Virus record (IMG/VR): IMGVR_UViG_3300042386_001233
Span: 62,001-126,000 of that record
Direction: 5' to 3' (one strand)
DNA: 64,000 nucleotides
Below the pieces are notes generated by a model, which was not told the origin of the DNA, did not search any database, and saw only the letters and a program-made list of their open reading frames with translations. A program made the position numbers and the translations under genes. This document shows positions 3,001-16,781 of the stretch, in pieces. The first letter of the stretch is position 1. The number at the start of each line of letters is the position of its first letter.

Positions 3001-5684
3001 GTATTATTAATTATGGAGATTTAGTTAATGTTACTGTTACTGGTTGTCCAGCTGGTACTGCTAGTAACGATGGTCTGTATGTTACACTAGATACTGGATG
3101 GACTAAAATTACTGATCAGTCCATAGAGAATCTAACAAAGTCAATCTCCTTTTTAAAACATAATTCAGTATTGTCTTATAGTAATAGCTTATTTTATAAT
3201 GGATTAAATACAGACATAACAGCTTCTAAGGTTATAATTTGCCCTACTCGTATACCATATGATATATTTCTGGTTGGAGATACAGTAGAGTGCTATTCAA
3301 AAGACGATAGACTATTATCTTCTGGGGGCAGTATAACTACTGTTAATATCGTTAAAAAAGGACTAATAAATAAGAATAACAAACTATACTCTGTTTTTGT
3401 ATTAAATGCCGCCATCACTAACCAAGACACTATCTCGCCCACTTCTGCAACAAATACATTACTAGTATACTCTAACAATACAACTAAAGAAAATAGAATT
3501 AGTAAGGATTATAATGCGTGGGGACTTGATTCTAATGGATATATTAAGGAAACTCCTCCATATGCTGGGTTTTCTGCTCATAGTGTTGGTTCTTACGGTA
3601 ATATGTCTCCTTTTGTTAACAAGAATTTATTAGATAAAAATTTTAGATATAACTCACTACAGGCAGCACACAATATCTTAAATAATCATGAAAATGATAA
3701 AATTCAAAAAAATAAATTGATTGTATATAATTATAGTAATGGTTCTCTTTCTGGAATATCTGCTTTTTCTAATGATATGGCCTGTGGATTTTCGTATAAT
3801 GAAAATGATTTATACGATAGTTCTATTTTTCAAACTAAAACTTCTAATGTAGCTATTGCTCCTGAAAACACAAGACAAGTGGATGGCGATTTTAGTAATT
3901 TGTCAGATAGTTTATTTGAGCAAATTAAAAATACAACAGGATACAATGAAACCAATTATTCTTTTATGTATGTTAGAACCTCATCCTCATCAACAAATCG
4001 TGCAGCTGCTACAATTCCATTATCAGGATACGTTACAATAGAGAACAATTATGAAGAGTACGTGCCTATTAAATTTGTAGACTTAACTAATATTATATCA
4101 AGATTAGCTACTATAGATACATTAAAGATACAGACAACACTAGAAAATATTGTTGGAGACGAGAGTCAAACTTCTACTATTCTTGCGTCTTCAAATATTA
4201 AATATATAGAAAAGCATATGAACAAGTTGGTCAAAGACGATCCTAGTAGTTGTCATAGACCCGGAGCTGTTATAGCTGATTGTCCAAAATTAAGAACCCA
4301 AACGAAACTCAATAAACTATATGTAGAGCGGACAGATCTGATTAAATTATTAGAGCAGCAAGCTGTTCAATCTGCGTCGATAACATATTTTGACGATTCT
4401 GGGAATAGACAAACAAGTACTGGCACAATTATTGCAGAGAGTAGTAGTTCTATCTCTTTAGACACTAGTGGAGGCATAACAAAAATTGCTAAATCTAGTA
4501 TTATTAATACAGACACAGAATATGGCTTAGCTAGATCTTTTACAAGAAAAGACCTGTTAGCAGCAGACCATATGCATAAGGTATCGTCGGATATTTTACC
4601 CAAAATAGAACCAGTGATAACTACTAATACTGACAGTAGCATAAATATACAATATTCTGGGGTTAATCTTAATCATTATTGGATTAATATTGACCCAAAA
4701 CAATCTTGTGTTTTAGATTTTACTAGTAATCCTAAAGTATTAGACTCTACAGAATATTTTTGTATAGAAGCCAATGTATCTAGCATGAATGCATTTGGTA
4801 GTACAGTGGTTGCAAATAATAACGTATGTCCAGATTTTGCTTCCAAAGAAAATGTTCCACAATTTCCAAGCGACGCTATCGGAGATGAGGGGTTTTCTTC
4901 GGCAGTATATAGGACATATAAATATACTATTCCTTTCAATACTGTTGAAAGAAACAAAACAGCATTGTCGCGTGAATATCCGGCGATTACTGGTTGGACT
5001 AAATATACCAAAGAAAGATTTTTTAATATAAACGCTGATAATAGCTTAGGCATTGGTGGAGCTGGGGATGAGACAACTGTACAGTCTAAAGAAACATATT
5101 GGATACCACTAATTAATAATACTCCAACCCATAATGATGGTTCGGCAGATACTCAGTCTGTTCCGGGAATCCCACAATGCCAAACTGATTCTCCTAGTCC
5201 TCCTGGGTTTGGTTTAATTGGTTCTGCATTTTCTGGAGGACTTGTGATTGGTGGAGGAAGGGTCGGAACTAGCACCAGAGTACAAAATATTTTCAATCTA
5301 GACGACATAACCTCTATTGATGTTCAAATTAAGAGAATACCAAGAATGTTAAGAGGTTGCGATATACTAGGAACAGTATATAGATATGGTAATCGCAACA
5401 TATTTAGACAACAATCATCATCTAATCCTAGAGTACCTTTTGAAGTAGATGGAATTGGATTGAATGGACCAATAAATAACGGACTATACTGCTGGATTTG
5501 TCTGCAACAGAGACTATCAGATAATAGTCTAAGATACGCTCCCCTTCCTCCTTTTTTTCAACATCAAAACGAAATGATATTTAGGAGCTTTTTTGGTAGT
5601 ATAGATAGGATAGAGAATAGAACAGATCTTATGGTACCCTATTACCCATGGGAGCTTATTCCTTATGAGTATTCAAGAAGTTGA
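3..5684 (+). CDS. Very large virion/tail-associated protein (5'-truncated) with an expanded proprotein-convertase P-domain-like region
   Basis: >1890 aa, Ser/Thr/Asn-rich; frame is open at the window's left edge; IKDIEVKLNF..NLVIWLEVQP..FTDNA..LNG..FTLKIMVLD..LCNWELILH resembles a P-domain beta-sandwich with long insertions. Confidence 0.55.
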   Translation, partial: RVRCSKFNRVAISQIGAVFVPISTGFTVREFIGMIGSVPETEVVKLDELYKFSTKRAFTQTASANLSITYNLESNTIAKISSIYIEKIRSNISGCEQCYSLYEPKLRAVKTMVFTGASRVRAVRYSRINKAPEGFLFYKYKSQAGPGLISAATIETVSFGYPDITTAQSPPVKTYGGYNNNVINSFNIQNNINSTVYSSTIPGLSRPTSNTGDSISLAAAQPSTLPPVTGFPLDAVNDQSSAKHKLCYQRQLPYVGGGPITFNKGVLHPNSGWIPHTSSDYAIHANRSSVLKFNPGARSTFSFIGPKLSNISSTSANISDNVVEPNTLSSSVELRIAPNVQWNPACECEASEGADIELYNNNQKHKESIDTTTNRSSHGYRYLNGGQPKPIERTALTNEATYNDEFGTDQDDDTFTYSFAVTGPASVPSEVNGSDGKKHLRIPTVQDFGIKDIEVKLNFLNYINTKNLVIWLEVQPDGTELRSRKANNLGIYPSPIRASQKFLDQTIPSPIVSGTSYQPGSSSSLLYNNIPNTKIANYLDGLLNAENDVPGGPLRLLLLNQEHIENNGYNFSVKFTDNASKYNVLYDQNIVTGTPATTATFFPLNQLADIDKQQNIIRHNGTVKPSLAANSYSDRQSCEFSKVLRNNRLNITAASFSKFNTNTLFRNTPPETGPCSERSPKQKQGDLNGATKFTLKIMVLDETDDLSPNDTLINNQYLTGLSSSSKTQSSTDIFNSLCNWELILHVGDVPKFVPHTNPNLASYGNCDVLSLLDYDKNLKYPGYSFIADLTNYQHLLPLANIDAPNTAIADTSLCLTSKNDPVGRGFVVRPVEFPSYAIVQIVASLIPSTTGTLIGTATTPGLGYGQGFNAIISWFGESRFLSNLEDSGRQIFTQSYTKYPFGSSEKILLNVKKPDSLWYSLEATIMKYHNTPILQLKKHNYVKVQRGVSKYATEFGFGIVSEYQELIDLKNIPEISLSCDGTLPFPAASITYPTTNYGNRIINYGDLVNVTVTGCPAGTASNDGLYVTLDTGWTKITDQSIENLTKSISFLKHNSVLSYSNSLFYNGLNTDITASKVIICPTRIPYDIFLVGDTVECYSKDDRLLSSGGSITTVNIVKKGLINKNNKLYSVFVLNAAITNQDTISPTSATNTLLVYSNNTTKENRISKDYNAWGLDSNGYIKETPPYAGFSAHSVGSYGNMSPFVNKNLLDKNFRYNSLQAAHNILNNHENDKIQKNKLIVYNYSNGSLSGISAFSNDMACGFSYNENDLYDSSIFQTKTSNVAIAPENTRQVDGDFSNLSDSLFEQIKNTTGYNETNYSFMYVRTSSSSTNRAAATIPLSGYVTIENNYEEYVPIKFVDLTNIISRLATIDTLKIQTTLENIVGDESQTSTILASSNIKYIEKHMNKLVKDDPSSCHRPGAVIADCPKLRTQTKLNKLYVERTDLIKLLEQQAVQSASITYFDDSGNRQTSTGTIIAESSSSISLDTSGGITKIAKSSIINTDTEYGLARSFTRKDLLAADHMHKVSSDILPKIEPVITTNTDSSINIQYSGVNLNHYWINIDPKQSCVLDFTSNPKVLDSTEYFCIEANVSSMNAFGSTVVANNNVCPDFASKENVPQFPSDAIGDEGFSSAVYRTYKYTIPFNTVERNKTALSREYPAITGWTKYTKERFFNINADNSLGIGGAGDETTVQSKETYWIPLINNTPTHNDGSADTQSVPGIPQCQTDSPSPPGFGLIGSAFSGGLVIGGGRVGTSTRVQNIFNLDDITSIDVQIKRIPRMLRGCDILGTVYRYGNRNIFRQQSSSNPRVPFEVDGIGLNGPINNGLYCWICLQQRLSDNSLRYAPLPPFFQHQNEMIFRSFFGSIDRIENRTDLMVPYYPWELIPYEYSRS

Positions 5685-6084: not shown

Positions 6085-6428
6085 GCCTTGCCCTCTGCTT
6101 GATCTTTGGACCATTTATGCCAACCCTTGTTAGGCAGTATTGTTCCGTTATCATCTTTCCTCTTTGGAAATAATGTTCCACCCTTTTTGTGTTGACCAAA
6201 AGCAAGAATTGCTCCACAGTCTGCACAGCGAAGTTCATAATAATCATTACCTTCAACGTTTCTAACGATAAATCTTAAATTGGTTGAAGAACACAAGCCA
6301 CACTTTTCTTCTGCAAAAATTTCTTGAATTACGGCTAGTTCCTTAAAAACTTCTTTTTGGCCAGAACCTTCTAATTCAAAGGTTAGTTTATCACTAGCTT
6401 TATATATTACTTTCATAACTATTTCCAA
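6069..6428 (-). CDS. Zinc-ribbon protein
   Basis: CGLC..CADCG motifs. Confidence 0.6.
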   Translation of the reverse strand: MEIVMKVIYKASDKLTFELEGSGQKEVFKELAVIQEIFAEEKCGLCSSTNLRFIVRNVEGNDYYELRCADCGAILAFGQHKKGGTLFPKRKDDNGTILPNKGWHKWSKDQAEGKAGKKS

Positions 6429-7165
6429 TCTTTAGAATACCCAACAATACTATTCGATATCTCATTGGTGTTCTGCTGATACTTAGACAATAGCCTAATT
6501 ACAGTTACAGCATCCTCATGAGAGATTCCGTAAATATTGTCAGTTGGTAGTTGATTATCTGAGAAAAGCCTCATTACATTAATATTAAGTCTCTGGGCCA
6601 TAACGTCAATGAAATTAATCTGATTATTACTAATCTTAGAAACAGTGTTTAAATCAGGATTATCTTCAATTTCCTTAGATATTTCTTCAGCAGCAACTAC
6701 TTTCCTGAGTCTCAATGCTCTACGAAGTGCCCTACCCTCTGCCCTAGTTTCAGCAACAGCTACCGGATGGTTGCGATATATCTTGTCGCAATTACCCCAA
6801 TAAACGTCCGCAGCGCCGTCAACAGTCACAGTATTTAAATCCTGTGTGTCACTTGACTGGTTTTTTAAAAGATAGCTTATAGAATGAATAACGGTGGCTC
6901 TTTTTTCATTGTCTGGACTGGGGGCTTGAGCAACCGCACTGGTTGACGATATTACCTGACAATTTAAGGCCAATTCAAAAATACGACGCAAACCATCTGT
7001 AGTAGGATTGCCAGAAATTTTCTCATCATCAGATAAAAGACCTAGTACATAATCTGTCCATTCTAGATCGGTAATCTTAGGCAACGCTACAACATCACTT
7101 TCGGGAGTTGGTGCTACTTTGTTTTCTACTTCTTTGTCCTTGCTCTTATCAACCTTGGCCATCAT
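6419..7165 (-). CDS. Putative single-strand annealing protein (Rad52/Sak-like)
   Basis: AVAETRAEGRALRRAL motif and a C-terminal ISNNQINFI..AVTVIRLL helical module typical of phage SSAPs. Confidence 0.55.
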   Translation of the reverse strand: MMAKVDKSKDKEVENKVAPTPESDVVALPKITDLEWTDYVLGLLSDDEKISGNPTTDGLRRIFELALNCQVISSTSAVAQAPSPDNEKRATVIHSISYLLKNQSSDTQDLNTVTVDGAADVYWGNCDKIYRNHPVAVAETRAEGRALRRALRLRKVVAAEEISKEIEDNPDLNTVSKISNNQINFIDVMAQRLNINVMRLFSDNQLPTDNIYGISHEDAVTVIRLLSKYQQNTNEISNSIVGYSKDWK

Positions 7166-7168
7166 AAA

Positions 7169-7966
7169 TTAGTCCTCTATAGTTAGAATTAATGGTATTT
7201 TAGATTGCTCACAAGATTTAATTGCTTGTAATAATCTCTCTAAGATAATTGTTCCTCTAGCATTTGAAAAATCTTTTGTTTGTTTGATTCTGATCAGATG
7301 CCACCCCTTACCAGTGATTAGTCCTTCTTTCTTTTTATCGTACTTTATATTTCTGCTCAGAGATTGCTCTCCCCACACTGGCTCAAAATGAGAAGGGCCG
7401 TCAACCTCAATAGCTGTACCAATACTAGGCAGGAACAGGTCGATCTGCAACTTGGTGGTAACAAGAGACTGTTCCTTATGAAACTCCACATGTAAACCAG
7501 AAGATAGCAGGTTCTTTAGTAAGAATTTTTCTAATTTTGATCCAACTTTACTAGATTGTCTTATAGCAACAATAGCTGCTTGTTGCATATTTTCTTTTTG
7601 ATTATGGTCTAATTTTTCCCAATTGGCTTTTGCTTTAGCTTTACGAGATTCTAATTCAGAAGCATCCAATGACTCCCATGAATTAAGAACACCCATACCA
7701 ATTTTATTTTTAATTTCTAACGATCTCTCTTGACCCTTTGTGGGATGCTTGTGTTTTCCTGTATTTAGAGCATTTTTTTGAGCGTCTGACTTATTGCGAA
7801 TTGTTATTTGAAATCTTTTAGCATCTCTTCTAACCTTATTTGCATAAGTTGACCATGCTGTAGCAATGTCAGCAAAGCTTTTATTCAATTCTTCATACCA
7901 TGTTCTGATAATCTTCTCTTTTTCTTTATCAGATAAATTGTCATATATATTTTGAGAGTTCTTCAT
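7169..7966 (-). CDS. Vsr/DUF559-type PD-(D/E)XK endonuclease with N-terminal DNA-binding region (homing-endonuclease-like)
   Basis: SKLEKFL..QIDLFLP..AIEVDGPSHF..D.KK..GWHLIRI. Confidence 0.7.
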   Translation of the reverse strand: MKNSQNIYDNLSDKEKEKIIRTWYEELNKSFADIATAWSTYANKVRRDAKRFQITIRNKSDAQKNALNTGKHKHPTKGQERSLEIKNKIGMGVLNSWESLDASELESRKAKAKANWEKLDHNQKENMQQAAIVAIRQSSKVGSKLEKFLLKNLLSSGLHVEFHKEQSLVTTKLQIDLFLPSIGTAIEVDGPSHFEPVWGEQSLSRNIKYDKKKEGLITGKGWHLIRIKQTKDFSNARGTIILERLLQAIKSCEQSKIPLILTIED

Positions 7967-8399
7967 AAGTAAATTGCTCCACTGTGGCTATTGGGCGTTT
8001 CCAACACATAGAATATAGGTCGTTTAGAACTGGACTGGTTACAATTATATCAAGATTCTCTTGCTCATAAATAGATCTCCACTGTTCATACATTCCGGTA
8101 TTGGTTTGTGTCCAATGGGTATCAGATGTAAATAGTATACGCTTGCTAATATTTGGGAATTGATTACTCAGAATAACACTAGGCATATCAAATAGTATTA
8201 GTTTTCCATCAAAAAACTGTGCTTGTTGAAGATGAAAAATTGGAACATTAAAAGTGTTACTTTTTTCCGAATAACTATTGAACACTACATGTTGCTGGTA
8301 TGGGCGACGTTTAATAAATTGTTCTACAGTATTTAGAATACTGTCATAAGTCTTGTTATTTAAAAGCTTTATTAAGACAAATCCTATATCTTCATTCAT
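7941..8399 (-). CDS. Hypothetical protein, glycosyltransferase-fragment-like
   Basis: Coupled ORF at the end of the GT cluster; Rossmann-like LDIIVTS segment. Confidence 0.4.
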   Translation of the reverse strand: MNEDIGFVLIKLLNNKTYDSILNTVEQFIKRRPYQQHVVFNSYSEKSNTFNVPIFHLQQAQFFDGKLILFDMPSVILSNQFPNISKRILFTSDTHWTQTNTGMYEQWRSIYEQENLDIIVTSPVLNDLYSMCWKRPIATVEQFTYEELSKYI

Positions 8400-9139
8400 A
8401 GTTTAAATAACTCTCTTAAAAATTTGTTATACGTAATATTAGTATGATATGTGTTTTCTGGTAGACTAGAAGTATAGCTATTATCTTTAATTTGGTCTAA
8501 GGAGACAACTATAGCCCCGCAAGACTTTGCCTCATTGGTATAGCTAAATCCAGCATCTTGTTTTAAGTCTAGATAATACTTATGCGTCTGCAATAGATTG
8601 GCTCTATTCTGTTCTGTTAACATACCAAGATTTTGGTAGTGCCTAATACTAGGGCAGTTGAAAAGCTTAATTGGCGTGGAACTATTTGGATATAGCAAAT
8701 CAAGTAGATCGTTAGGAATAGAAGCTAATCCATCCATAAAACAAACTATACCATCTTTTTTATTGTCATTTGTGCTAGTGCTATAAAATAGTTGATCATT
8801 AACCAACCCTAATGGAATAGCTACATCATAAGTATCATCATATCCAATATGGACTACTCTACATTTTTGAGGCAGTAAGGTCTTGACATTCTCATATGAC
8901 TTATTGTCAATATGAAAAAAATAAATGTTGGTACTATCGCTATAGTCCTCACAGAATTGTAAAATTTCTTTATTTACTAGACTGCCAGAGAATATGCAGT
9001 ATTCCGGCTTATGTCTAAAGAATGTTTGATATAGATTATTTCCTATTGATATATCTATTATCATAATATCTTCAAAAGATAAAGCAGAACAGTTTTGAAC
9101 AAACTTTTCCGAGCTTTGCTGTACAAGAATAGATCTCAT
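8396..9139 (-). CDS. Degenerate GT-B glycosyltransferase-like protein
   Basis: C-terminal KYYLD..YTNEAKSCGAIVV resembles an eroded GT-B EX7E region. Confidence 0.45.
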   Translation of the reverse strand: MRSILVQQSSEKFVQNCSALSFEDIMIIDISIGNNLYQTFFRHKPEYCIFSGSLVNKEILQFCEDYSDSTNIYFFHIDNKSYENVKTLLPQKCRVVHIGYDDTYDVAIPLGLVNDQLFYSTSTNDNKKDGIVCFMDGLASIPNDLLDLLYPNSSTPIKLFNCPSIRHYQNLGMLTEQNRANLLQTHKYYLDLKQDAGFSYTNEAKSCGAIVVSLDQIKDNSYTSSLPENTYHTNITYNKFLRELFKL

Positions 9140-9807
9140 ATAAATACTTTAGCTTTTGGCAAATCCTTAATAGTATTGATTTTCATAATTTTGGTTTTAT
9201 TCAGGTAGTGTTTGCTTAATATTGTGTTAGACGATAGCATTTCATTAAGCAACTCAAACAAATACATTTGACTAGTTTTATTTTGTTGAACTATGACCGA
9301 CAAATTATTAATAGCATCCTTATCCAAGTAAACACACTCTGCCCAAGGTTCTGGCAAATCGTAGAAAATATATTCTGTAACAGACTGAGTTAGTGCACAA
9401 CCTAAGTTAAAGTTTTCTTTGGCTTTGTCAAGAAGAAAAAGCTTTGAATGTCCAGACAGCAGTAGTTTATTTAGGGTATTTTTTTTCATCAATATCCCGT
9501 TATTAATAATCAAAAGATGTTTTGGAGAATATTTTTCTAAATACAGTCTTATGGATTCTCCTTGATTAGTTTCTTTGTAGGTTGGATTAAAAGTATATTC
9601 TATACTCAATTCGTCTAGAACAGAATGAACTTTCTCGGCTTCAAATCCAGTAGCAACAGTTATTTGTGTTTTTATATCAAGATTTTTAATATTGTGTATT
9701 TGATATTCTAGTACCTTTGTGTGCTTCTTAATATCTAAAAGGGCTTTTGAGCCTAATGACTTCATCCCTTTTGTTATTTCTGGAACCAGAATCAAAACAT
9801 GTAACAT
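9136..9807 (-). CDS. Degenerate nucleotidyltransferase (NTP_transf/LicC-like)
   Basis: LILVPEITKGMKSLGSKALL..VATGFEAEKV..NPTYKETNQGESI; the canonical AAGxGxR and GD residues are replaced. Confidence 0.6.
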   Translation of the reverse strand: MLHVLILVPEITKGMKSLGSKALLDIKKHTKVLEYQIHNIKNLDIKTQITVATGFEAEKVHSVLDELSIEYTFNPTYKETNQGESIRLYLEKYSPKHLLIINNGILMKKNTLNKLLLSGHSKLFLLDKAKENFNLGCALTQSVTEYIFYDLPEPWAECVYLDKDAINNLSVIVQQNKTSQMYLFELLNEMLSSNTILSKHYLNKTKIMKINTIKDLPKAKVFI

Positions 9808-9811
9808 CGTT

Positions 9812-10228
9812 TTATATACTTACTCTTTCGATATTGATACTAATATTATATTCAGCATAGTTAATATTGATTAGTTTAAAAACGTTTGTATCTAATGTTG
9901 TTAAGATATCTTCGATAATTACTATGTTGTTTTTGCCTCTTAATGAGTCGAAGATTTGGGATGATGGTATTTTAGAATTTAAAAAATCCTCAAATAATTT
10001 CTTAAAGTTAGTTAGACTAATAGTAATCTGTCCTTGAGGCTTAATCTTGGATAGGGACTGTTTGATAATTGTTTGTAAGCTAGATTTTTCTTGGTACTCT
10101 AGACATGAACACAAAATATTATCGGCAGAATGATTTATAATCTGTTCTATGTTATTTGTTAAGATTTTTTGATATCCAGAAATATTAGATACCGGTTCTG
10201 AAATACTAACTATATGATAATTTCTCAT
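9812..10228 (-). CDS. Degenerate class I methyltransferase-like protein
   Basis: ADNILCSCLEY..LSKIKPQGQITI resembles the C-terminal half of a methyltransferase; no GxGxG motif. Confidence 0.4.
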   Translation of the reverse strand: MRNYHIVSISEPVSNISGYQKILTNNIEQIINHSADNILCSCLEYQEKSSLQTIIKQSLSKIKPQGQITISLTNFKKLFEDFLNSKIPSSQIFDSLRGKNNIVIIEDILTTLDTNVFKLININYAEYNISINIERVSI

Positions 10229-11103
10229 GAAACAAAGAACTCCTCAAGTTTTATTTTTTGTAATAGTGTGTTGACGCTGCTATAAAATGCATTAAAGCTA
10301 TGATTGGATTGTATCCATGATTGATTGTGTAAAATATCCTCTTTGCTAAGCTCATCATTAATAATAGAGTTTAGTACTGTGTTAATATTACTATAGTCAA
10401 ATAGTAGTGTTATCCCTTTAATCTCTGGATTATGGCTTGTGGAAGTTATTGTTTTACATCCTAGATATTGGGAAATAAGAACATTCATAGGATTGTATAT
10501 GTCAATACATACTTTATATTTAGACATAATACTATATAGTGTATTGATTGAATCAATATGCTGCAATCCATTGATTATTTGTGCTGTTGGGAATTCATTT
10601 TTAATATGCTGATATAAATTATTAATTTCTTGACTATTATTTGCATTCATAATCAAAATAGATTCTGTTTTCTTTATATTATTAAGATCTTCGAATACTG
10701 GTATTCCATATGGTACTATTATATTCTTTTCATCAATATCACAGCCCCAAGCTTTTAATGTTTGAATATCAGAAAATATTTTTGTTGTATCATGTAATTG
10801 GTTTTTTACTAAAGCAATGTCTTCTTTTTTAAACTTTACCGGAGGACCATTATGGAACCAAACCATATCTATTAAATGCTGATTATGAGCTAGCATTTTG
10901 GTTTGCTGAGTATGCTCCAAGAAATTATTGCTCCAAAACAAGTCATAATAATAGTTTTGTAAACTACTATTTGTCTGATATAGATTAACTTCTAGTAACC
11001 CTGCTAGTAAATCAAAAGTATTATTTGTTGGAGAATACAGAATATTAGTATTTTTATTAACATACTTATATGCTATATTGTATATAGGATTAGAATAACT
11101 CAT
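10225..11103 (-). CDS. Degenerate GT-B glycosyltransferase-like protein
   Basis: IIVPYGI..LYSIMSKYKVCID..YLGCKTI pattern; EX7E absent. Confidence 0.5.
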   Translation of the reverse strand: MSYSNPIYNIAYKYVNKNTNILYSPTNNTFDLLAGLLEVNLYQTNSSLQNYYYDLFWSNNFLEHTQQTKMLAHNQHLIDMVWFHNGPPVKFKKEDIALVKNQLHDTTKIFSDIQTLKAWGCDIDEKNIIVPYGIPVFEDLNNIKKTESILIMNANNSQEINNLYQHIKNEFPTAQIINGLQHIDSINTLYSIMSKYKVCIDIYNPMNVLISQYLGCKTITSTSHNPEIKGITLLFDYSNINTVLNSIINDELSKEDILHNQSWIQSNHSFNAFYSSVNTLLQKIKLEEFFVS

Positions 11104-11104
11104 T

Positions 11105-12106
11105 TTATAGATATTTATTAATGTGATTTGTTTTAAACAAAGAGGCCGTGTTGTGTATCTGTCTCACTTCTAGATATTTTTTAATGCTGCTATTTATTGT
11201 TTGAGAAGATATCTTTAAAGATCCAGCTTGATTAATTTTATTAGACCCATCAGTTAAACTAAAGATATAGTCAGGATCAATCTTGATAATATTCTTCTTT
11301 AAGCTATTGGCTATTTTTAGATTAATACTATTTGATCCATAGTCAACAGCATCAATAAAGACATCTCCAGACTTATGGGCTGCATATATGTTATTTAAGT
11401 CTGATGTTATTGGAGCAATAATGACTCTGTTTATTGAGTATTTTGTGTCCATACTATTGTAAGTTTCTTTGATAAATTTCTCCAATTCAGCCTTTTCAGA
11501 TGAGGATATATCCAGAGTGAACAAAACCAATACTATATCTTTAGATCTTAGATTTCCAATAAATGATACTATAGTATCATATATAACTCTGACATTTGTT
11601 CTATAATTGCATACCATGTATAGTTTTTCACTATTGTTTAGTAGCCCTATATTAAATCCAGCTTTATAAGATGAATCAACATCAAAAACATAATCTATGT
11701 TCTTAACTAGTTTTTGCAATGTGGGGTAAGCTTGAGAAAACCTGATAACATCTGGCTTGTTGTCTACTAATATTCCGTCAAACCTTAGGACTTTATCTAT
11801 AACATCTTTTGGTACAAGGTTCGTATCTATAATTGGTATTAATATGTTTCTGTCTACCGAATCTATAACACAAGCCTTATTCAAAGGAACATGCTGAATA
11901 ACAGTATCAATCTTTGATAAGTGTATATTTTCTTGACGACATAGAGCTTCGTCTATATTCTTTATAGCACATTTACTATCAAGAAATATTGGTCTTAGTG
12001 ATATATTTTTTGATCGGTCGCTAAGCATGTTTTGTATTAATGCTGTTGACCACAATCCATTAATATCTCTTTGTCGATATGGTCCAATGTATAGAGTATT
12101 ATTCAT
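11105..12106 (-). CDS. Degenerate GT4-like glycosyltransferase
   Basis: LYIGPYR..DTVIQH..AHKSGDVFID; EX7E lost. Confidence 0.5.
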   Translation of the reverse strand: MNNTLYIGPYRQRDINGLWSTALIQNMLSDRSKNISLRPIFLDSKCAIKNIDEALCRQENIHLSKIDTVIQHVPLNKACVIDSVDRNILIPIIDTNLVPKDVIDKVLRFDGILVDNKPDVIRFSQAYPTLQKLVKNIDYVFDVDSSYKAGFNIGLLNNSEKLYMVCNYRTNVRVIYDTIVSFIGNLRSKDIVLVLFTLDISSSEKAELEKFIKETYNSMDTKYSINRVIIAPITSDLNNIYAAHKSGDVFIDAVDYGSNSINLKIANSLKKNIIKIDPDYIFSLTDGSNKINQAGSLKISSQTINSSIKKYLEVRQIHNTASLFKTNHINKYL

Positions 12107-12108
12107 TA

Positions 12109-13776
12109 TTAGGTTACGTTTTTCAGGTGTGCGTATGTGATAAAATCTTCATCAAATTTAACATTATTATTCTTAACATTTTCTGCTTGATTATTATTAT
12201 CTATCATAGTATTAATATAGTCAAGAGTATTATTAAAATCAAAAGGAGCCATTGATGTAGCACTAGATTGTACAAATCCATAGTCTGCATTTTTAAGCAG
12301 TTCTAACATTTTGTATGATCCTATGAGTTCTGTTTCTTGGAAATTATTATTGCATATTCCAATAAGTCTATCAAAATGGGTCTGAGGATCAATATTTGAC
12401 TCTTTGATTACTGGTGTCTCATATTTTCCAGTATTCCATTTAGACCTATATCCCTTTGCATCTAATTCGTCAAAATACTTTTCCCATTTTTGAGCAATAT
12501 TATCCCAATTATAGTGCTGATGTGTCAGATCTTGAATTTCATGTCTTAATTTTTCTCTGGTTGGTTTTGGCTTATTGATAAAATCAATTATATAATTAGC
12601 TAAATCATTATTATCTGGATAAACCCGTAAAGCTTTTGTTTCTAGTTCTTTAAATAGAGTTTGTATCTTGATTGGGTAGGCTTTTAATTTTTTAACTATA
12701 TCACACATAGCACTATAATCCACGGTAGCTATCGGCACACCACAAGCCCCAGCCTCCACCTGCGGCATACCAAATCCCTCACAGATTGAGTACTGAACAT
12801 AAAGATCAAATATGTTGTATATGCTACTCAGAGTGTCAGAAGATACACCTTCTGTTACAGATGGAAAGGTCATGCTTTTGCTCATACATTTTACACAAAC
12901 CTTTTGTGGGCCAGTAAATACAGAGCACTGGGTTGTCTTACAGTTTTTACATATATAGGTGAATAGAACCCTATTACTAACTCTTGACTGTCTTAGTAGT
13001 TCAGGAATATCCCAACCCATATCAGGATAGCTAGTATGAAGATATAGATATAGATTCTCTCCCAAAGAACTATTAGAGGCTTCTAATCTATCTAGGACTT
13101 CTCTGAAAGTGGTAAATAATTCTGGTATTAGTTTGCGTTTTTGGTTACGCATAACTGATCCTATTATGATAGAATCAGGAGATAGTCCAAGCTGTTGTTT
13201 AATATCGCTTCTGTTTTTTATCTTAAAGGTATTAATATCCACGCCAGGGGAAGTAGTATCTATATAATTAATCTTGTTAGATGATTGCTCTTTAAGAACT
13301 TCCGCACCCCAATCAGAGTATGTAAAGACTGCATCTGCGTCTAAGAAGGTATCTATCCATTCTTCTTGCTGTGGTGAAGAATCTACTGTTGGCATTAATA
13401 TCCAATGGAAAAATTTTCTAAGAGGAGAGGATCCTTGGTAAGCACTCATCCAATAATCACGAACATCAATAACGATATCTGGTTTAAAGTCCAATAAAAC
13501 CTTTTCAAAACGCCAGCGTCCAAACTGATTGTCTACTCTGGACGAATATTCTTTATGTCTATGGTCTGAATCTTTAACAGCATTGGCGTAGTATTTCCAG
13601 TGAATAGATACATCCCTCGGATCATTAACAAAACCATAAGAAGCGAATTCTGCTATTTCATACTTATTGGTTTTGTGTAAACGAGTTAGTAGTTCTTTTG
13701 CATATATACCGAAACCAGAATGAATAAAACTGGCTTCAGAGCACATCAAGATTTTTAATTTATTGTTTTTTGTCAT
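12109..13776 (-). CDS. GT4 (GT-B) glycosyltransferase with Cys4 insertion
   Basis: SGFGIYA, RNQKRK and FDLYVQYSICEGFGMPQVEAGACGVP (intact EX7E); CKNC..CVKC insertion. Confidence 0.85.
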   Translation of the reverse strand: MTKNNKLKILMCSEASFIHSGFGIYAKELLTRLHKTNKYEIAEFASYGFVNDPRDVSIHWKYYANAVKDSDHRHKEYSSRVDNQFGRWRFEKVLLDFKPDIVIDVRDYWMSAYQGSSPLRKFFHWILMPTVDSSPQQEEWIDTFLDADAVFTYSDWGAEVLKEQSSNKINYIDTTSPGVDINTFKIKNRSDIKQQLGLSPDSIIIGSVMRNQKRKLIPELFTTFREVLDRLEASNSSLGENLYLYLHTSYPDMGWDIPELLRQSRVSNRVLFTYICKNCKTTQCSVFTGPQKVCVKCMSKSMTFPSVTEGVSSDTLSSIYNIFDLYVQYSICEGFGMPQVEAGACGVPIATVDYSAMCDIVKKLKAYPIKIQTLFKELETKALRVYPDNNDLANYIIDFINKPKPTREKLRHEIQDLTHQHYNWDNIAQKWEKYFDELDAKGYRSKWNTGKYETPVIKESNIDPQTHFDRLIGICNNNFQETELIGSYKMLELLKNADYGFVQSSATSMAPFDFNNTLDYINTMIDNNNQAENVKNNNVKFDEDFITYAHLKNVT

Positions 13777-13820
13777 AAAAAATAGACAGGGGCCTGCTCA
13801 TCACAGACCCCCGTTTATTG
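13777..13820 (-). terminator. Rho-independent terminator after ssb
   Basis: Minus strand ACGGGGGTCTG-loop-CAGGCCCCTGT followed by CTATTTTTT. Confidence 0.7.
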
Positions 13821-13841
13821 TTTCCTTACATTCTCATAAGA

Positions 13842-14213
13842 TTAAAACGCTACAGGTTCGGATGAGTCCTGCTTGCTGTTCTTTGTTAAGCGAGTGATCT
13901 TAGAAAAGTTATTTACTCTAACCTTAAGACTACTGTGCTTAACTCCGTCCTTTTCCCAGGTATCGTTCCTTAAAGATCCCTCGACCATAACCAAATCACC
14001 CTTCTTGAATGACTCAGCAATCATCTCGGCACCACTATCCCAAGCTTCACAATTAATGAAAGAAGTAATCTTGTCTTTGTCGCCACTAGCCTTCGTATAT
14101 TCACGAGATACAGCTACTGTAAAATTAACAACAGATGTTTGCTTGCCACCAGTATTAACAATCCTTAATTCTGGATCACGAGCAAGATTACCTCTAAGCA
14201 ATGTAATATTCAT
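13842..14213 (-). CDS. ssb: Single-stranded DNA-binding protein
   Basis: LRGNLARDPELR..FINCEAW..KGDLVMVEGSL and acidic C-tail ending VAF; start moved to ATG 14213, behind an AAGGAG RBS. Confidence 0.95.
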   Translation of the reverse strand: MNITLLRGNLARDPELRIVNTGGKQTSVVNFTVAVSREYTKASGDKDKITSFINCEAWDSGAEMIAESFKKGDLVMVEGSLRNDTWEKDGVKHSSLKVRVNNFSKITRLTKNSKQDSSEPVAF

Positions 14214-14256
14214 ATATATCAAACTCCTTGTAAAAAAGAAATCACGCAACTACTAC

Positions 14257-14284
14257 ATTATAGCAATGAGCCGTTGATTGTCAA
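14257..14284 (-). promoter_or_regulatory. Consensus sigma70 promoter for ssb
   Basis: TTGACA-N16-TATAAT with TGn extended -10. Confidence 0.8.
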
Positions 14285-15906
14285 GTTATAGGCTCAAAAC
14301 ACTTTTCTACGATCAGACCGTCCTTGCTTTTGCTTTTATTTCCTGAAAAGACTAAAATATTACCTATAAATAAATAAGATCTATACTGGGAAAACTGTTC
14401 AGGAAAAAAGACCACAGAATCCAAAGTTCCGTATTGATCCTCTATGGTAACAAAAGCCATCTCTAGACCCGGATTCTTACCGCTCTTAGTTTTAGTAACA
14501 TTAACATTCCCAATCTCTCCTACTAAAACTATGTTTTCTTTTAGCAATGATGTCTTGAATGTTTTACAATTACAATTGGCCATAGTAATATCATAAACAT
14601 CAAGTTTAGAGCATGTGATACCAACCCCTAGTAAATCATTTTCTTGATCTGATAACCATTCTATTTTATCAATTAAGGAGTAAGGCGGATGTCCTAATGA
14701 TCTTATATAGTTCGCTATTGTTTCTTTTCGTCCTCTGATTAGTTTAGTTTCAGTATATAAAGCACTGAGAATGTCTATTATAGTACTATCTATCATGGTC
14801 TTTGAGTAAATATTAAATACCGTTTGCTCTTTTTTGGTTAATCCAGAACATATTTCATATTCGAAGAGCATCTCTGATCTATTTTTCTTATAGTAGTCAA
14901 ATGCGCCGCTACTAATCAAAGCCTTGGCTGCAACAGAGTTTATATTCATCAGAATATTGCCGACCATTTGTGGCCACGTTATATCATTAACATTCGTGTT
15001 CTTTGTTAGTTCTAATATTTTCTTGTATACAGACTGTCCTACCCCCTTTATGTCTGTTAAGCCAAAGTATATCTTTTGATTTTTCAATATGAAAAGCTCA
15101 TTTAAATTTCTAAAGTCAGGAATATGGACTTCTATATCCATCTCCATAGCATTTCTAACCAACTCTTTTATTTCCTGTTGAGGATCTATTTTGTCCTTAG
15201 CGAACCTGAGATATGATGCAAAAAAGATCTTGGGGAAATGTGCTTTAGCATACGCTGATAAATAAGCATTCATTGCATAGCTTATGGAATGACTAGCATT
15301 AAATAAGTATCTTTGTGATTTTTCAATCCATTCGAATATTTGTTCTGCTTCTGGTTCTGATAGTTTCCCAGTCTGCTTAGATCCTTCTATAAACTTCTTA
15401 CGGACTTTTGCCATTTTATCTGCTTGCTTTTTACCAATGGCTTTTCTTAGATCGTCTGCTTCTTGTAAATTGAAACCCGCTAGCTCTTTAGCTATAGACA
15501 TAGCCTGTTCTTGGTAAATCATTTCAGAATAGGTATGTTTTAAGATTGGCTCTAGTGCTGGATGGAAATAGTCAATAGACTCTAAGCCATTCTTTTTATC
15601 TATATAATGATTGCTTACGCTTTTACCATCTCTATGTGCCTCAAGACAACCCGGCCTAAGAATACTGATCAAGCCAGATAGCTGCTCAATATTTTGAGGC
15701 TTTAATTTCCGGGCCATGGTTTGTCCTAATCTGGACTCTAGCTGAAAACATCCTTTAGTATTGCCTTCGGATATCAGTTCCCATGTTTTATAGCATTCTA
15801 AACTAATGTTAGATAGTTTGGGAGAAAATTTTATTTTAGGAAATTCTCCACCCTTATCTAATACTTCAAATTTACATCCACAATCAAATACAAAAGAGTC
15901 TGACAT
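14281..15906 (-). CDS. dnaE: DNA polymerase III alpha, C-terminal half (fingers, HhH, OB)
   Basis: GCFQLES, LRPG, IYQEQAM, ADDLRKAIGKK, YLFNASHS, GLTDIKGVG, MAFVTIEDQYG. Confidence 0.93.
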   Translation of the reverse strand: MSDSFVFDCGCKFEVLDKGGEFPKIKFSPKLSNISLECYKTWELISEGNTKGCFQLESRLGQTMARKLKPQNIEQLSGLISILRPGCLEAHRDGKSVSNHYIDKKNGLESIDYFHPALEPILKHTYSEMIYQEQAMSIAKELAGFNLQEADDLRKAIGKKQADKMAKVRKKFIEGSKQTGKLSEPEAEQIFEWIEKSQRYLFNASHSISYAMNAYLSAYAKAHFPKIFFASYLRFAKDKIDPQQEIKELVRNAMEMDIEVHIPDFRNLNELFILKNQKIYFGLTDIKGVGQSVYKKILELTKNTNVNDITWPQMVGNILMNINSVAAKALISSGAFDYYKKNRSEMLFEYEICSGLTKKEQTVFNIYSKTMIDSTIIDILSALYTETKLIRGRKETIANYIRSLGHPPYSLIDKIEWLSDQENDLLGVGITCSKLDVYDITMANCNCKTFKTSLLKENIVLVGEIGNVNVTKTKSGKNPGLEMAFVTIEDQYGTLDSVVFFPEQFSQYRSYLFIGNILVFSGNKSKSKDGLIVEKCFEPIT

Positions 15907-15908
15907 AT

Positions 15909-16607
15909 TTATCCAACGGTAAATGCTGATTTAAATTTTACTTTATTCGAAATATTACGATGTAGTCTAAGAAAACGAATTAAAATATCTGCCGTATCCT
16001 TAACGTCTTTAAGAGCATCGTGAGCGCCCTCTTTACTAATTCCTAGATAGTCTCTAAGGTTATCTAGTGTATAGTTTTTAAGTTCATTATTTCCTTCAAA
16101 CCAATAAAAAACCAAATTCATCAAATCTATAACATCTCTTGGATAAAAAAGATCTGAACGACCCTCTTTATTAAGATTGTCATATTTTTTACTAAGCCTC
16201 TCCATTATTCGTAAATCAAATCTGTTGATATTATACCCAGCAGCAATCGGAGCAGTAAAACATGATTTTTTACCGCTTGATCGTGAATGATACATATTCA
16301 GATATGATACAAATAATTGCCATCCATTTTCTTGCTTTTGATAGGACTTCCAGTCAGCTAAAATAGCATCTTTAGTACTAGACCTAACTTTCGCATGAAA
16401 GTCTAGAACATCAGAATCTCCATAAGCATAATCAATATTATTTTCTAAAGCTTCTGGCTTTATCGTAATATTAAATTCAGAATCTGGTATAACTTCTAGT
16501 CGATATGGATCGATCATTATAGCAGCAATCTGAACAGGACTACATGTGTCGGGATTAATCCCGTCGGTTTCAAGATCAAATACGCAAATTTTTTGTAAAT
16601 TAGCCAT
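15909..16607 (-). CDS. DEDDh 3'-5' exonuclease (DnaQ/epsilon-like)
   Basis: VFDLETDG, AGYNINRFD, AHDALKDV. Confidence 0.9.
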   Translation of the reverse strand: MANLQKICVFDLETDGINPDTCSPVQIAAIMIDPYRLEVIPDSEFNITIKPEALENNIDYAYGDSDVLDFHAKVRSSTKDAILADWKSYQKQENGWQLFVSYLNMYHSRSSGKKSCFTAPIAAGYNINRFDLRIMERLSKKYDNLNKEGRSDLFYPRDVIDLMNLVFYWFEGNNELKNYTLDNLRDYLGISKEGAHDALKDVKDTADILIRFLRLHRNISNKVKFKSAFTVG

Positions 16608-16779
16608 TTACCACTACTACTGTTGAACCTGGGAAAAATGCCTTCTGGTTATTATCAGCTGCTACTTGACAGTTGATAGATCTGCAACAACTAACTCTGA
16701 CTTCTTCTGTCTTAACGTATTCAACATTGTTAACAGTGAATTTATCACCGAGCACTAATTCTTCAAATTTCTTTTCCAT
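16600..16779 (-). CDS. Small 59-aa protein between the dnaE halves (not in the ORF track)
   Basis: Hand-translated MEKKFEELVLGDKFTVNNVEYVKTEEVRVSCCRSINCQVAADNNQKAFFPGSTVVVVNG; GGAG RBS; overlaps the exonuclease start. Confidence 0.7.
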   Translation of the reverse strand: MEKKFEELVLGDKFTVNNVEYVKTEEVRVSCCRSINCQVAADNNQKAFFPGSTVVVVNG

Positions 16780-16781
16780 GA

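What the first reader, a model, noticed from the sequence alone, without database searches (positions are those of the whole stretch)
7941..13776. One intact Cys4-insertion GT4 plus six eroded glyco-enzyme homologues inside the replication module
Seen: between ssb and the SSAP/nuclease genes lie seven tightly packed, uninterrupted ORFs. Only the GT4 keeps its EX7E motif, and it carries a CKNC..CVKC insertion. Three GT-B-like ORFs, a nucleotidyltransferase-like ORF (no GxGxR or GD), a methyltransferase-like ORF (no GxGxG) and a GT-fragment-like ORF have lost catalytic signatures but are not broken. Established: T4 DNA alpha/beta-glucosyltransferases are GT-B enzymes. Inference: this block, far from the glycan island, may be an undescribed multi-subunit system, for example DNA or replisome glycosylation with pseudo-enzyme scaffolds.
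Basis: partly seen in the sequence, partly recalled or inferred. Interest (0 to 1): 0.72.

Follow-up and report, generated by a model that had tools for sequence, protein, structure and literature searches.

The report
Phage glycosyltransferase module with degenerate partners
A widespread, uncultured lake jumbo phage keeps, next to its DNA-replication genes, one fully intact sugar-transferring enzyme and six companion genes, three of which come from working sugar enzymes that lost their usual catalytic residues yet stay under selection; what the module glycosylates is unknown, and DNA looks unlikely.

Summary
Seven tightly packed minus-strand ORFs (7941-13776) lie between ssb and a conserved nuclease gene in a complete 243.8-kb jumbo phage. 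The 555-aa protein is a canonical GT4 with invariant R/K and EX7E residues and a confidently modelled Cys4 insertion. F333, E292 and B247 have GT-B folds. A152 is one GT-B half. C223 is sugar-nucleotidyltransferase-like. D138 resembles the rear part of a SAM methyltransferase.

The block keeps its gene order in about 60 IMG/VR relatives. dN/dS is 0.03-0.24, so the genes are not decaying.

The new result is the direction of the erosion. Deeper relatives still carry the canonical residues: R-K and E-x7-E/D in F, the GT1-type Glu in E, and GD/DG in C. The window's lineage lost them stepwise, and F lost them at least twice. It gained new fixed motifs instead: KKED in E, and EITKGMKSxGSK, near-fixed, in C.

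The genome has ThyX. It lacks a ThyA-type hydroxymethylase or hydroxylase, a TET/JBP or other tested dioxygenase, and a C5 methylase. It also lacks lipid-carrier priming transferases and a Wzx flippase. DNA glycosylation is therefore not supported, though it is not excluded.

My best reading is a cytoplasmic glycosylation module with one catalytic GT4 and repurposed, probably non-catalytic, partners. The acceptor is unknown. This is a new variant of phage glycosylation cassettes.

The parts
12109..13776 (-). GT4 glycosyltransferase, 555 aa. It is a core gene of the lineage and the only canonically catalytic member of the block.
   Evidence: Pfam Glycos_transf_1 3.6e-12, above cut-off, and phrog_2170 5e-31. 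The AF2 model has pLDDT 89 and a GT-B fold plus a C-terminal helical extension; the top PDB match is 3oy2, E 1e-16. About 90 invariant columns in 30 homologues. dN/dS is about 0.04. 866 clusters at 50% identity score E<1e-30.
12754..12780 (-). EX7E motif of the GT4 (E333 to E341).
   Evidence: Both Glu are invariant. In relatives an intein with LAGLIDADG is inserted just after residues 331-333.
12886..12951 (-). Cys4 (CxxC...CxxC) beta-hairpin insertion in the C-terminal domain of the GT4 (C276, C279, C294, C297).
   Evidence: Read directly from the sequence. Modelled as short strands at pLDDT >90. The Cys are conserved in the main clade; the distant clade keeps the insertion but only C276.
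11105..12106 (-). F333: GT-B paralogue of the GT4 with all four canonical donor-binding/catalytic residues lost.
   Evidence: hhalign to the GT4 gives 89% probability over residues 1-333 vs 6-431; E333 aligns with G257 and E341 with I265. Outgroup orthologues keep R-K and E-x7-E/D and hit Pfam GT1. The motif was lost at least twice on the GT4 tree. dN/dS 0.08-0.17 in unsaturated pairs.
10225..11103 (-). E292: compact GT-B protein that lost the conserved C-domain Glu and gained an invariant KKED motif (residues 92-95, window 10819-10830).
   Evidence: AF2 model pLDDT 92; Foldseek SenB, HepE and GlgM at E about 1e-7. Orthologues in L086, L085 and L073 are Pfam GT1 proteins with the Glu-bearing LEAM/LESM motif. 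K92, E94 and D95 are invariant. dN/dS 0.09-0.18.
9812..10228 (-). D138: small protein resembling the part of a class I SAM methyltransferase after motif I. No GxGxG in any clade.
   Evidence: Its profile matches PDB 3dli at 0.0033, and 14 of the 18 listed hits are SAM methyltransferases, all aligned after motif I. Alignment with outgroups. dN/dS 0.06-0.24.
9136..9807 (-). C223: sugar-nucleotidyltransferase-like protein. The metal-binding Asp of the GD motif is lost, and the N-terminal motif EITKGMKSxGSK (residues 10-21, window 9745-9780) is near-fixed.
   Evidence: NCBIfam NTP-transferase and GlmU models at 3e-6 to 7e-5, below cut-offs. PDB profile hits to IspD, GlmU and UGPase. Outgroups keep AGD, DG or DD. 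dN/dS 0.04-0.11.
8396..9139 (-). B247: compact GT-B protein that keeps the second Glu of the GT-B signature (E203-A204..C207-G208). It may still be an enzyme.
   Evidence: Its own ESM Atlas model aligns to GT4 proteins at TM 0.71-0.77. E203 aligns with GT4 E341 in hhalign. Column counts. Seen only in the main clade.
7941..8399 (-). A152: stand-alone single Rossmann-like half of a GT-B fold.
   Evidence: Atlas model pTM 0.86, TM 0.69-0.76 to one domain of GT4-type proteins. Present in the distant clade too. dN/dS 0.03-0.12.
13786..13814 (-). GC-rich hairpin followed by a T-run (intrinsic terminator or attenuator) between ssb and the GT4 start codon.
   Evidence: 12-bp stem with 7 GC pairs. Sequence. 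A hairpin with differing sequence occupies this position across the main clade. One metatranscriptome contig spans it.
14257..14284 (-). Consensus sigma-70 promoter (TTGACA-16-TATAAT with extended TG) driving ssb, and by read-through probably the block.
   Evidence: 12 of 12 match. Sequence.
13842..14213 (-). ssb, the upstream boundary of the block. The real ATG is at 14213, preceded by AGGAG.
   Evidence: Pfam SSB 1.4e-25. Start read from the sequence.
7169..7966 (-). Conserved core gene with a C-terminal Vsr-like nuclease domain, the downstream boundary of the block. It overlaps A152 by 26 nt.
   Evidence: phrog_559 3.4e-13. Weak match to the AbaSI N-terminal domain, E 0.063. Many invariant columns.

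Best explanation
The block is a conserved glycosylation module of a large, uncultured lineage of lake jumbo phages.

Shown:
- One gene, the 555-aa GT4, is a canonical retaining-type GT-B enzyme and a slowly evolving core gene.
- F, E and C descend from working enzymes: two GT4/GT1-type transferases and a sugar-1-phosphate nucleotidyltransferase.
- In the window's lineage those three lost their canonical catalytic residues stepwise. All seven genes stay intact, syntenic and under purifying selection.
- E acquired a new invariant motif and C a near-invariant one.

Inferred:
- The GT4 transfers a sugar from a host-made NDP-sugar to a conserved acceptor in the cytoplasm.
- The degenerate paralogues no longer extend a glycan. 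They serve as non-catalytic or re-purposed partners that recognise the acceptor, act as scaffolds or chaperones, or bind ligand. The non-catalytic GT-B protein GtfB plays such a role for the GT4 enzyme GtfA.
- B247, which keeps the signature Glu, may add a second sugar.
- Transcription probably comes from the strong ssb promoter by partial read-through of a conserved terminator. That would mean low-level expression during the replication phase.
- The acceptor is more likely a protein (phage or host) than DNA, because the genome has no known means of making a hydroxylated base and no lipid-carrier machinery.
For: Conservation:
- Synteny of all seven genes in about 60 IMG/VR loci with GT identity from 92% down to 51%. 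F, D, C and A persist in a clade at about 40%.
- dN/dS is 0.03-0.24 for the six partners against about 0.04 for the GT4 and DnaE.

Folds and families.

Direction of the erosion:
- Outgroups L058, L070-L075, L085 and L086 keep R-K and E-x7-E/D in F. L073, L085 and L086 keep the Glu-bearing LEAM/LESM motif in E. C keeps a GD-type Asp in seven of nine outgroup rows, including L058, L085 and L086.
- The window's clade has variable, unconstrained residues at those positions.
- On the GT4 tree the E and C losses precede the F loss, and F is lost at least twice.
- New constrained motifs: KKED and EITKGMKSxGSK.

Acceptor:
- No ThyA-type gene, Tet_JBP, PF13640/PF13759 dioxygenase or C5 methylase; ThyX is present.
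- No Bac_transf, WecA-type transferase or Wzx.
- No segment in any of the seven proteins reaches transmembrane-like hydrophobicity (maximum 19-residue Kyte-Doolittle mean 1.32).

Expression: promoter, conserved terminator and a bridging RNA-library contig.

Precedents: a distantly related GT (24% identity) lies in the head-gene module of cyanophage S-CBS4, two genes from a methyltransferase. Virion glycosylation is reported for mycobacteriophages (cited in PMC12619734).
Against: - No physical evidence of a complex. The GT4+F333 prediction gave no answer.
- Loss of canonical residues does not prove loss of activity. The new invariant motifs in E and C could be alternative active sites, and B247 keeps the signature Glu.
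- The acceptor is not identified by any test.
- The position inside the replication module, a dNMP kinase 6 kb upstream and the make-up of several GT4-like GTs plus a nucleotidyltransferase resemble proven DNA arabinosylation clusters (PMC13326640).
- The RNA evidence is two short contigs from one library at low depth.
Confidence: 0.45

Rival explanations
1. DNA (or replisome) glycosylation. The GT4 would put a sugar on a modified base in replicating phage DNA, and the partners would help extend or target the modification, protecting the genome from host nucleases.
For: - The block lies in the replication and nucleotide-metabolism module: ssb, split DnaE, exonucleases, dNMP kinase, primase, helicase, UvsX, RNR.
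- Its make-up parallels the experimentally characterised DLP3, RB69 and RL38J1 clusters. Those hold several GT4-like GT-B enzymes whose best structural matches are the same proteins found here (MshA, BshA, SPS, tll1591, 7qsg), plus a sugar nucleotidyltransferase and kinases (PMC13326640, section 25).
- The accessory GT set varies between clades, as in the glyco-diverse T-even phages.
- A conserved Vsr-like nuclease is translationally coupled downstream.
Against: - The complete genome has no ThyA-type homologue, which is the source of hmC, hmU and 5hoC in all characterised cases.
- It has no Tet_JBP or other tested 2OG dioxygenase and no C5 methylase.
- It encodes ThyX, so it makes ordinary dTMP.
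- T4 alpha- and beta-GT are not among the 50 best PDB matches.
- Illumina assemblies of this phage are clean and deep in many lakes, although that does not exclude modification.
Confidence: 0.12
2. Remodelling of a host envelope glycan (LPS, capsule or cell-wall polymer) early in infection. This would block superinfection or stop progeny from adsorbing to debris, using the host's lipid-carrier machinery.
For: - This is the usual reading of paralogous GT clusters with NDP-sugar enzymes in jumbo phages (PMC7824862, section 3.4.10).
- In distant relatives the block holds RgpF-, DUF5672- and GT2-type enzymes typical of polysaccharide synthesis.
- The window also carries a large glycan island with NeuB, a CMP-transferase, a pyruvyl transferase and methyltransferases.
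- Early, sigma-70-driven expression would fit.
Against: - The GT4, including its acceptor-side N-domain, is as conserved as the DNA polymerase across a very broad lineage. That is unexpected for an enzyme acting on variable host surface glycans.
- The genome has no priming phosphoglycosyl transferase and no flippase.
- None of the seven proteins has a membrane-spanning segment.
Confidence: 0.2
3. All seven proteins are still enzymes. The erosion would be a change of catalytic residues and substrates, for example a new donor or an inverting-like mechanism, so that the block is a divergent but fully enzymatic pathway.
For: - New invariant polar motifs arose as the old ones were lost: KKED in E292 and the Lys-rich EITKGMKSxGSK in C223, where Lys could replace the canonical Arg.
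- B247 keeps E203-A204.
- E292's best structural matches are SenB enzymes, compact GT-B proteins.
- Purifying selection is as strong as for many enzymes.
Against: - F333 has no invariant polar residue at all, only Q71 and L193 at 90% or more. All four canonical positions vary freely.
- D138 lacks the SAM-binding half of the fold in every clade.
- C223 lost the metal-binding Asp, with N/S/G variation at that position.
Confidence: 0.18
4. The six partners are decaying remnants drifting neutrally after loss of function.
For: They evolve two to four times faster than the GT4. Canonical motifs are gone.
Against: - dN/dS is 0.03-0.24 in unsaturated pairs.
- There are no frameshifts or stops in about 60 loci, and protein lengths vary little.
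- New invariant motifs exist.
- The genes persist at depths where synonymous sites are saturated.
Confidence: 0.02

Closest known systems
GtfA-GtfB (Gtf1-Gtf2) O-GlcNAc transferase of streptococcal serine-rich repeat adhesins (from my own knowledge; GtfA structure 4pqg appears and TIGR02918)
   Same: A catalytic GT4 enzyme is encoded next to a GT-B-fold paralogue that lacks the catalytic residues and is nevertheless required.
   Different: - Similarity to GtfA is weak (E 1e-3 to 2e-5, around the EX7E region only).
- No DUF1975 insertion and no serine-rich substrate gene were seen.
- Here there are up to five degenerate partners, not one.
- Complex formation is untested.
DNA poly-arabinosylation and glycosylation clusters of phages DLP3, RB69 and RL38J1 (PMC13326640), and TET-associated DNA glycosyltransferases (bioRxiv 10.1101/2023.12.21.572611)
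   Same: - Several GT4-like GT-B transferases sit with a sugar nucleotidyltransferase among nucleotide-metabolism genes.
- The best structural matches are the same (MshA, BshA, SPS, tll1591).
- A dNMP kinase lies nearby.
   Different: - No thymidylate-synthase homologue, TET or methylase to create the acceptor base. A dCTPase was not searched for.
- Most of the transferases here lack catalytic residues.
Virus-encoded capsid glycosylation: chlorovirus GTs such as B736L (3oy2) and A075L (PMC11571054), and mycobacteriophage virion glycosylation (Freeman et al. 2023, cited in PMC12619734)
   Same: - The best solved-structure match of the GT4 is chlorovirus B736L.
- These are cytoplasmic, lipid-carrier-independent glycosylation systems run by virus-encoded GT-B enzymes.
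- The phage also carries a large glycan island.
   Different: - Identity is only 16%.
- The block lies in the replication module, not among structural genes.
- No glycosylated virion protein is known for this lineage.
Glycan gene clusters of jumbo (cyano)phages, interpreted as surface-polysaccharide modification systems (PMC7824862)
   Same: Paralogous GT genes with NDP-sugar enzymes, polymorphic between related phages.
   Different: - The GT4 and its partners are core, syntenic and slowly lost, rather than sporadic.
- Most members are catalytically degenerate.

Membership tests
CAZy GT4 / Pfam Glycos_transf_1 (for the 555-aa protein) | Score above the curated Pfam gathering threshold | tested here: met
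   46.6 bits against a cut-off of 26.4.
CAZy GT4 / Pfam Glycos_transf_1 (for the 555-aa protein) | GT-B two-Rossmann fold | tested here: met
   AF2 model pLDDT 89. Foldseek finds 3oy2, GlgM, SPS, MshA and BshA at E 1e-16 to 1e-12.
CAZy GT4 / Pfam Glycos_transf_1 (for the 555-aa protein) | EX7E motif and the Arg/Lys pair that binds the donor phosphates | tested here: met
   E333, E341, R210 and K215 are invariant in 30 homologues.
CAZy GT4 / Pfam Glycos_transf_1 (for the 555-aa protein) | Retaining glycosyl transfer from an NDP-sugar | not testable with these tools
   Needs an enzyme assay.
GT4/GT1-type glycosyltransferase (for F333) | Homology to, and the fold of, GT-B GT4 enzymes | tested here: met
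   hhalign 89% to the GT4. PDB 2f9f at 4e-4. It hits the genome's other GT1 at 3e-9.
GT4/GT1-type glycosyltransferase (for F333) | EX7E and R/K residues | tested here: not met
   The window has N-V / G...I at those positions. The positions vary across the clade, and outgroups keep RK / E...E(D).
GT4/GT1-type glycosyltransferase (for E292) | GT-B fold and orthology to Pfam GT1 proteins | tested here: met
   The E292 profile hits the L086 GT1 protein at 7e-8.
GT4/GT1-type glycosyltransferase (for E292) | Conserved C-domain Glu (LEAM motif) | tested here: not met
   At the column aligned to the outgroup Glu, main-clade sequences carry I, F, Y, C, L, V, S or M (I in the window).
Sugar-1-phosphate nucleotidyltransferase, Pfam NTP_transferase (for C223) | Score above curated thresholds | tested here: not met
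   Pfam 13 bits against 21.2. NCBIfam 22-27 bits against cut-offs of 290-370.
Sugar-1-phosphate nucleotidyltransferase, Pfam NTP_transferase (for C223) | G-x-G-x-R...K signature and the metal-binding Asp (GD) | tested here: not met
   The signature is EITKGMKSxGSK instead. The Asp is replaced by N, S or G in the main clade and kept in most outgroups.
Class I SAM-dependent methyltransferase (for D138) | Motif I (GxGxG) SAM-binding loop | tested here: not met
   Absent in all 36 aligned members and in the two outgroup proteins. Profile matches cover only the region after motif I.
T4-type DNA glucosyltransferases (alpha-GT, beta-GT) and DNA base glycosylation systems | A phage-encoded route to a hydroxylated base (ThyA-type hydroxymethylase or hydroxylase, or methylase plus TET/JBP) | tested here: not met
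   No match in the complete genome. ThyX is present.
T4-type DNA glucosyltransferases (alpha-GT, beta-GT) and DNA base glycosylation systems | Specific structural similarity to known DNA glycosyltransferases | tested here: not met
   None among the 50 best PDB, 30 best Swiss-Prot or 50 best BFVD matches listed.
T4-type DNA glucosyltransferases (alpha-GT, beta-GT) and DNA base glycosylation systems | Glycosylated nucleosides in virion DNA | not testable with these tools
   Needs LC-MS or raw nanopore signal.
GtfA/GtfB-type catalytic GT plus non-catalytic GT-B partner | A stable hetero-complex of the two proteins | tested here: inconclusive
   The complex prediction scored 0.00 and the verdict was 'no answer'.
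Moraphages (PMC12619734), a described lineage of large aquatic phages with four core GT orthogroups | Heat-shock (DnaK) genes reported in all members | tested here: not met
   No HSP70 in the complete genome. This single marker was the only membership test run.

The most novel reading that the evidence does not exclude
The block is a dedicated multi-subunit glycosylation machine in which a single catalytic GT4 is served by up to five pseudo-enzyme descendants of a former glycan-assembly pathway. It acts during replication on phage DNA or on a replication or packaging protein, through an acceptor chemistry that does not depend on any known hydroxylated-base pathway.
Probability: 0.1. Interest if true: 0.85.

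Novelty: new variant of a known kind. Interest (0 to 1): 0.6.

Why it matters
Phage glycosyltransferase cassettes are known. I found no described case in which most members of a pathway turn stepwise and repeatedly into intact, selected, catalytically degenerate proteins around one conserved enzyme.

The lineage is abundant. This very phage is found at full identity in 23 lake metagenome runs from 2018 to 2024. The GT4 family spans at least 866 clusters at 50% identity. The unknown function is therefore ecologically widespread.

The frequent inteins in the GT4, including one inside the catalytic motif, mark it as a gene as conserved as replication proteins. Relatives with intact and with eroded motifs both exist, so the comparison offers a natural experiment on how pseudo-enzymes arise. 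It also gives clear constructs for biochemistry.

Tried and rejected
- Megablast of 7000-15000 against GenBank phages found nothing. tblastn with F333 also found nothing.
- Pfam and PHROG scans of the six partners alone gave nothing significant.
- Profile searches of PDB sequences were empty or at chance level for E292, B247, A152, the extra gene X and o6419.
- Complex prediction for GT4+F333 returned 'no answer'. It is not used as evidence either way.
- Membership in the described 'moraphage' lineage was considered, because that lineage has four core GT orthogroups. It is not supported by the one marker tested, HSP70.
- I looked for paralogues of the block families elsewhere in the genome. 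Only the second GT1, just outside the window, relates to F333 and the GT4.
- I tested whether the cyanophage S-CBS4 and S-EIV1 neighbours of the related GT belong to the block's families. They do not.
- Neutral decay was rejected on dN/dS.
- The Cys4 insertion as an essential zinc site was rejected as a general feature. The distant clade keeps the insertion without the cysteines.

Full report
**Setting.** The window is bases 62001-126000 of a single 243,821-bp virus record with direct terminal repeats, rated complete. GC content is about 33%. The region lies at the end of a long minus-strand replication and nucleotide module. That module holds a class I-type ribonucleotide reductase, PhoH, a UvsX-like recombinase, a DnaB-like helicase, a primase, a dNMP kinase and a PD-(D/E)XK exonuclease. 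It also holds a DnaE-type polymerase split into two ORFs with a DnaQ-like exonuclease between them, and ssb.

**The observation.** Seven minus-strand ORFs fill 7941-13776 with gaps of -4 to +4 nt. Taken alone, only the 555-aa protein matches a family above threshold: Glycos_transf_1 at 46.6 bits against a cut-off of 26.4, and phrog_2170 at 5e-31. Its EX7E motif (E333, E341) and the R210/K215 pair are invariant in 30 diverse homologues. The CKNC...CVKC insertion is there and is modelled confidently as a small beta structure in the C-terminal domain.

- F333: iterated profiles pull in the GT4. Profile-profile alignment covers the whole GT-B core at 86-89% probability. The profile finds GT1 C-domains in the PDB at 4e-4 and the genome's other GT1 at 3e-9.
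- E292: the AlphaFold model (pLDDT 92) is a compact GT-B. Its best matches are SenB, HepE, GlgM, PimA and BshA, with E about 1e-7.
- B247: the ESM Atlas holds a model of this exact protein. It aligns over its full length to GT4-type enzymes at TM 0.71-0.77.
- A152: the Atlas model (pTM 0.86) equals one Rossmann half of such enzymes.
- C223: it matches NTP-transferase and GlmU models at 3e-6 to 7e-5, far below their cut-offs. As a profile it matches IspD, GlmU and UGPase.
- D138: its profile matches SAM methyltransferases (3dli at 0.0033, and 14 of 18 listed hits). Only the region behind motif I is matched.

**Conservation.**
- A scan of IMG/VR with the GT4 returned 80 loci at 38-100% identity.
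- In every locus long enough, the same genes follow in the same order between ssb and a conserved nuclease gene.
- The partners diverge much faster than the GT4: 25-50% identity where the GT4 is at 60-70% and SSB at about 80%. They never break.
- In unsaturated pairs dN/dS is 0.03-0.24 for the partners and about 0.04 for the GT4 and DnaE. That rules out neutral decay.
- Most relatives carry an eighth gene between D and C, about 240-260 aa with an N-terminal cysteine cluster. The window's sub-clade lacks it.
- A clade with the GT4 at about 40% identity keeps F, D, C and A. It has other glycosyltransferases (DUF5672, RgpF, a clear GT1) where E and B stand in the window.
- Two still more distant contigs show GT4, then GT1 (F), then GT1 (E), then D, X, a GT2 and C.
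- The GT4 family is very large, with 866 clusters at 50% identity scoring E<1e-30.
- About a quarter of the best 150 GT4 matches carry long insertions at two fixed sites, one after residues about 101-111 and one inside EX7E. One insertion at the EX7E site, in L063, was checked and is an intein with a LAGLIDADG domain.

**Direction of the erosion, the main new result.** Aligning the orthologues shows that the missing catalytic signatures are a derived state.
- F: the outgroups (L058, L070-L075, L085, L086), and in part L048/49/52, have R-K and E-x7-E/D. All others, including the window, have variable residues at all four positions.
- E: the outgroup proteins are Pfam GT1 members with a Glu-bearing LEAM/LESM motif. 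The main clade has I, F, Y, C, L, V, S or M at the aligned column. It has an invariant K-K-E-D in the N-terminal domain, where the outgroups vary.
- C: most outgroup proteins (seven of nine rows) have AGD, DG or DD at the metal-binding position of sugar nucleotidyltransferases. The main clade has N, S or G there. Its N-terminal motif is near-fixed as EITKGMKSxGSK.
- D: motif I is missing in every clade.
- Tree: on a GT4 tree the losses in E and C map to the base of a 46-row clade. The loss in F maps to a 41-row clade containing the window, and independently to L054/L055.
- B247: it keeps Y200..E203-A204..C207-G208 in 30 of 31 sequences, and E203 aligns with the GT4's E341. It may still be active.

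**Expression signals.**
- A perfect sigma-70 promoter with an extended -10 precedes ssb.
- A 12-bp GC-rich hairpin with a T-run lies between ssb and the GT4 start codon.
- A hairpin of differing sequence occupies this position throughout the main clade. In the distant clade the GT4 directly abuts the upstream gene.
- In one lake metatranscriptome only the ssb area of the 5.9-kb stretch is represented. One 246-nt contig runs from ssb across the hairpin 85 nt into the GT4.
- I read this as high ssb expression with partial read-through into the block. The evidence is thin.

**What it acts on.**
Those hold several GT4-like enzymes with the same structural neighbours, a nucleotidyltransferase and kinases (PMC13326640).
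- Those clusters, and the TET-linked systems (10.1101/2023.12.21.572611), all depend on an enzyme that creates a hydroxyl on the base. The complete genome has no ThyA-type gene, no Tet_JBP, no PF13640 or PF13759 oxygenase and no C5 methylase. It does encode ThyX.
- The genome also lacks priming phosphoglycosyl transferases and a Wzx flippase. None of the seven proteins has a membrane segment. The GT4's acceptor-side domain is as conserved as the polymerase across the lineage. Together these argue against a variable host surface glycan.
- The window also has a large glycan island with NeuB, a CMP-transferase, a pyruvyl transferase, methyltransferases and five or more GTs including RgpF. The same families sit inside the block in distant relatives.
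- The GT4's best solved-structure match is a chlorovirus GT. A distant homologue in cyanophage S-CBS4 lies among head genes, two genes from a methyltransferase.
- I therefore favour a cytoplasmic, probably protein, acceptor. This is inference only.

**Verdict.** There is a conserved, undescribed module built around one catalytic GT4, with partners that behave like pseudo-enzymes. DNA glycosylation lacks its known prerequisites. I rate it a new variant of phage glycosylation cassettes, of moderate to high interest, with clear experiments available.

Noticed in passing
window 14281-18650 (-): The DnaE-type polymerase is split. The PHP and core part is at 16782-18650 and the fingers/HhH/OB part at 14281-15906, with a 59-aa ORF and a DnaQ-like exonuclease gene between them. 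A relative (L086) has an intein in the C-terminal part and a dCMP deaminase gene inserted.
   Followed up: partly
relatives of window 12109-13776 (e.g. L063:10004-12868; P0001, P0035, P0043): About a quarter of the 150 best GT4 homologues carry long insertions at two fixed sites, after about aa 101-111 and inside the EX7E motif after aa 331-333. Some carry both (1270-1330 aa). The one checked, at the EX7E site in L063, is an intein with a LAGLIDADG domain. Inteins in a glycosyltransferase are unusual.
   Followed up: partly
window 13786-13814 and 14257-14284 (-): ssb is framed by a 12/12 sigma-70 consensus promoter with an extended TG and by a GC hairpin terminator, found across the main clade, that ends 10 nt before the GT4 ATG. 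The GT4 has no visible Shine-Dalgarno sequence. The consensus promoter argues for a host with a standard sigma-70 and against Bacteroidota.
   Followed up: partly
window 32240-53933 (-): A large glycan island: GT-D-like protein, CMP-sugar cytidylyltransferase, polysaccharide pyruvyl transferase, NeuB, NAD-dependent epimerase, two Methyltransf_24 proteins, CAP59-like, GT64, DXD-type and RgpF-type glycosyltransferases. The genome has no priming transferase and no flippase.
   Followed up: partly
L006:13941-14696 and about 45 other loci, between the D and C genes: Most relatives have an eighth gene (240-274 aa) with invariant C8, C11, C23 and C51 and no family or PDB match. The window's sub-clade has lost it.
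   Followed up: partly
window 6419-7966 (-): Two very conserved core genes follow the block. o7169 has an invariant-rich N-terminal domain and a Vsr-like nuclease C-domain (weak AbaSI N-domain match). o6419 is at 62-83% identity across the clade, with no family, PHROG or PDB match.
   Followed up: partly
window 6-5684 (+): A 1892-aa ORF on the opposite strand with no PHROG match.
   Followed up: no
window 8400-14300 (runs X1-X23): This exact sequence occurs at 100% of sampled words in 23 lake-water metagenome runs from 2018 to 2024. Two of them were laid on the stretch and gave assembled depths of 24-68x with no differences. The phage is persistent and abundant in lakes.
   Followed up: partly
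G000:C1:179226-179825 (outside the window): A ThyX flavin-dependent thymidylate synthase (E 2e-47) is the only thymidylate-synthase-type gene in the genome.
   Followed up: no
window 27518-28135 (-): A free-standing HNH endonuclease gene between PhoH and small ORFs in the replication module. It is likely a mobile homing endonuclease.
   Followed up: no
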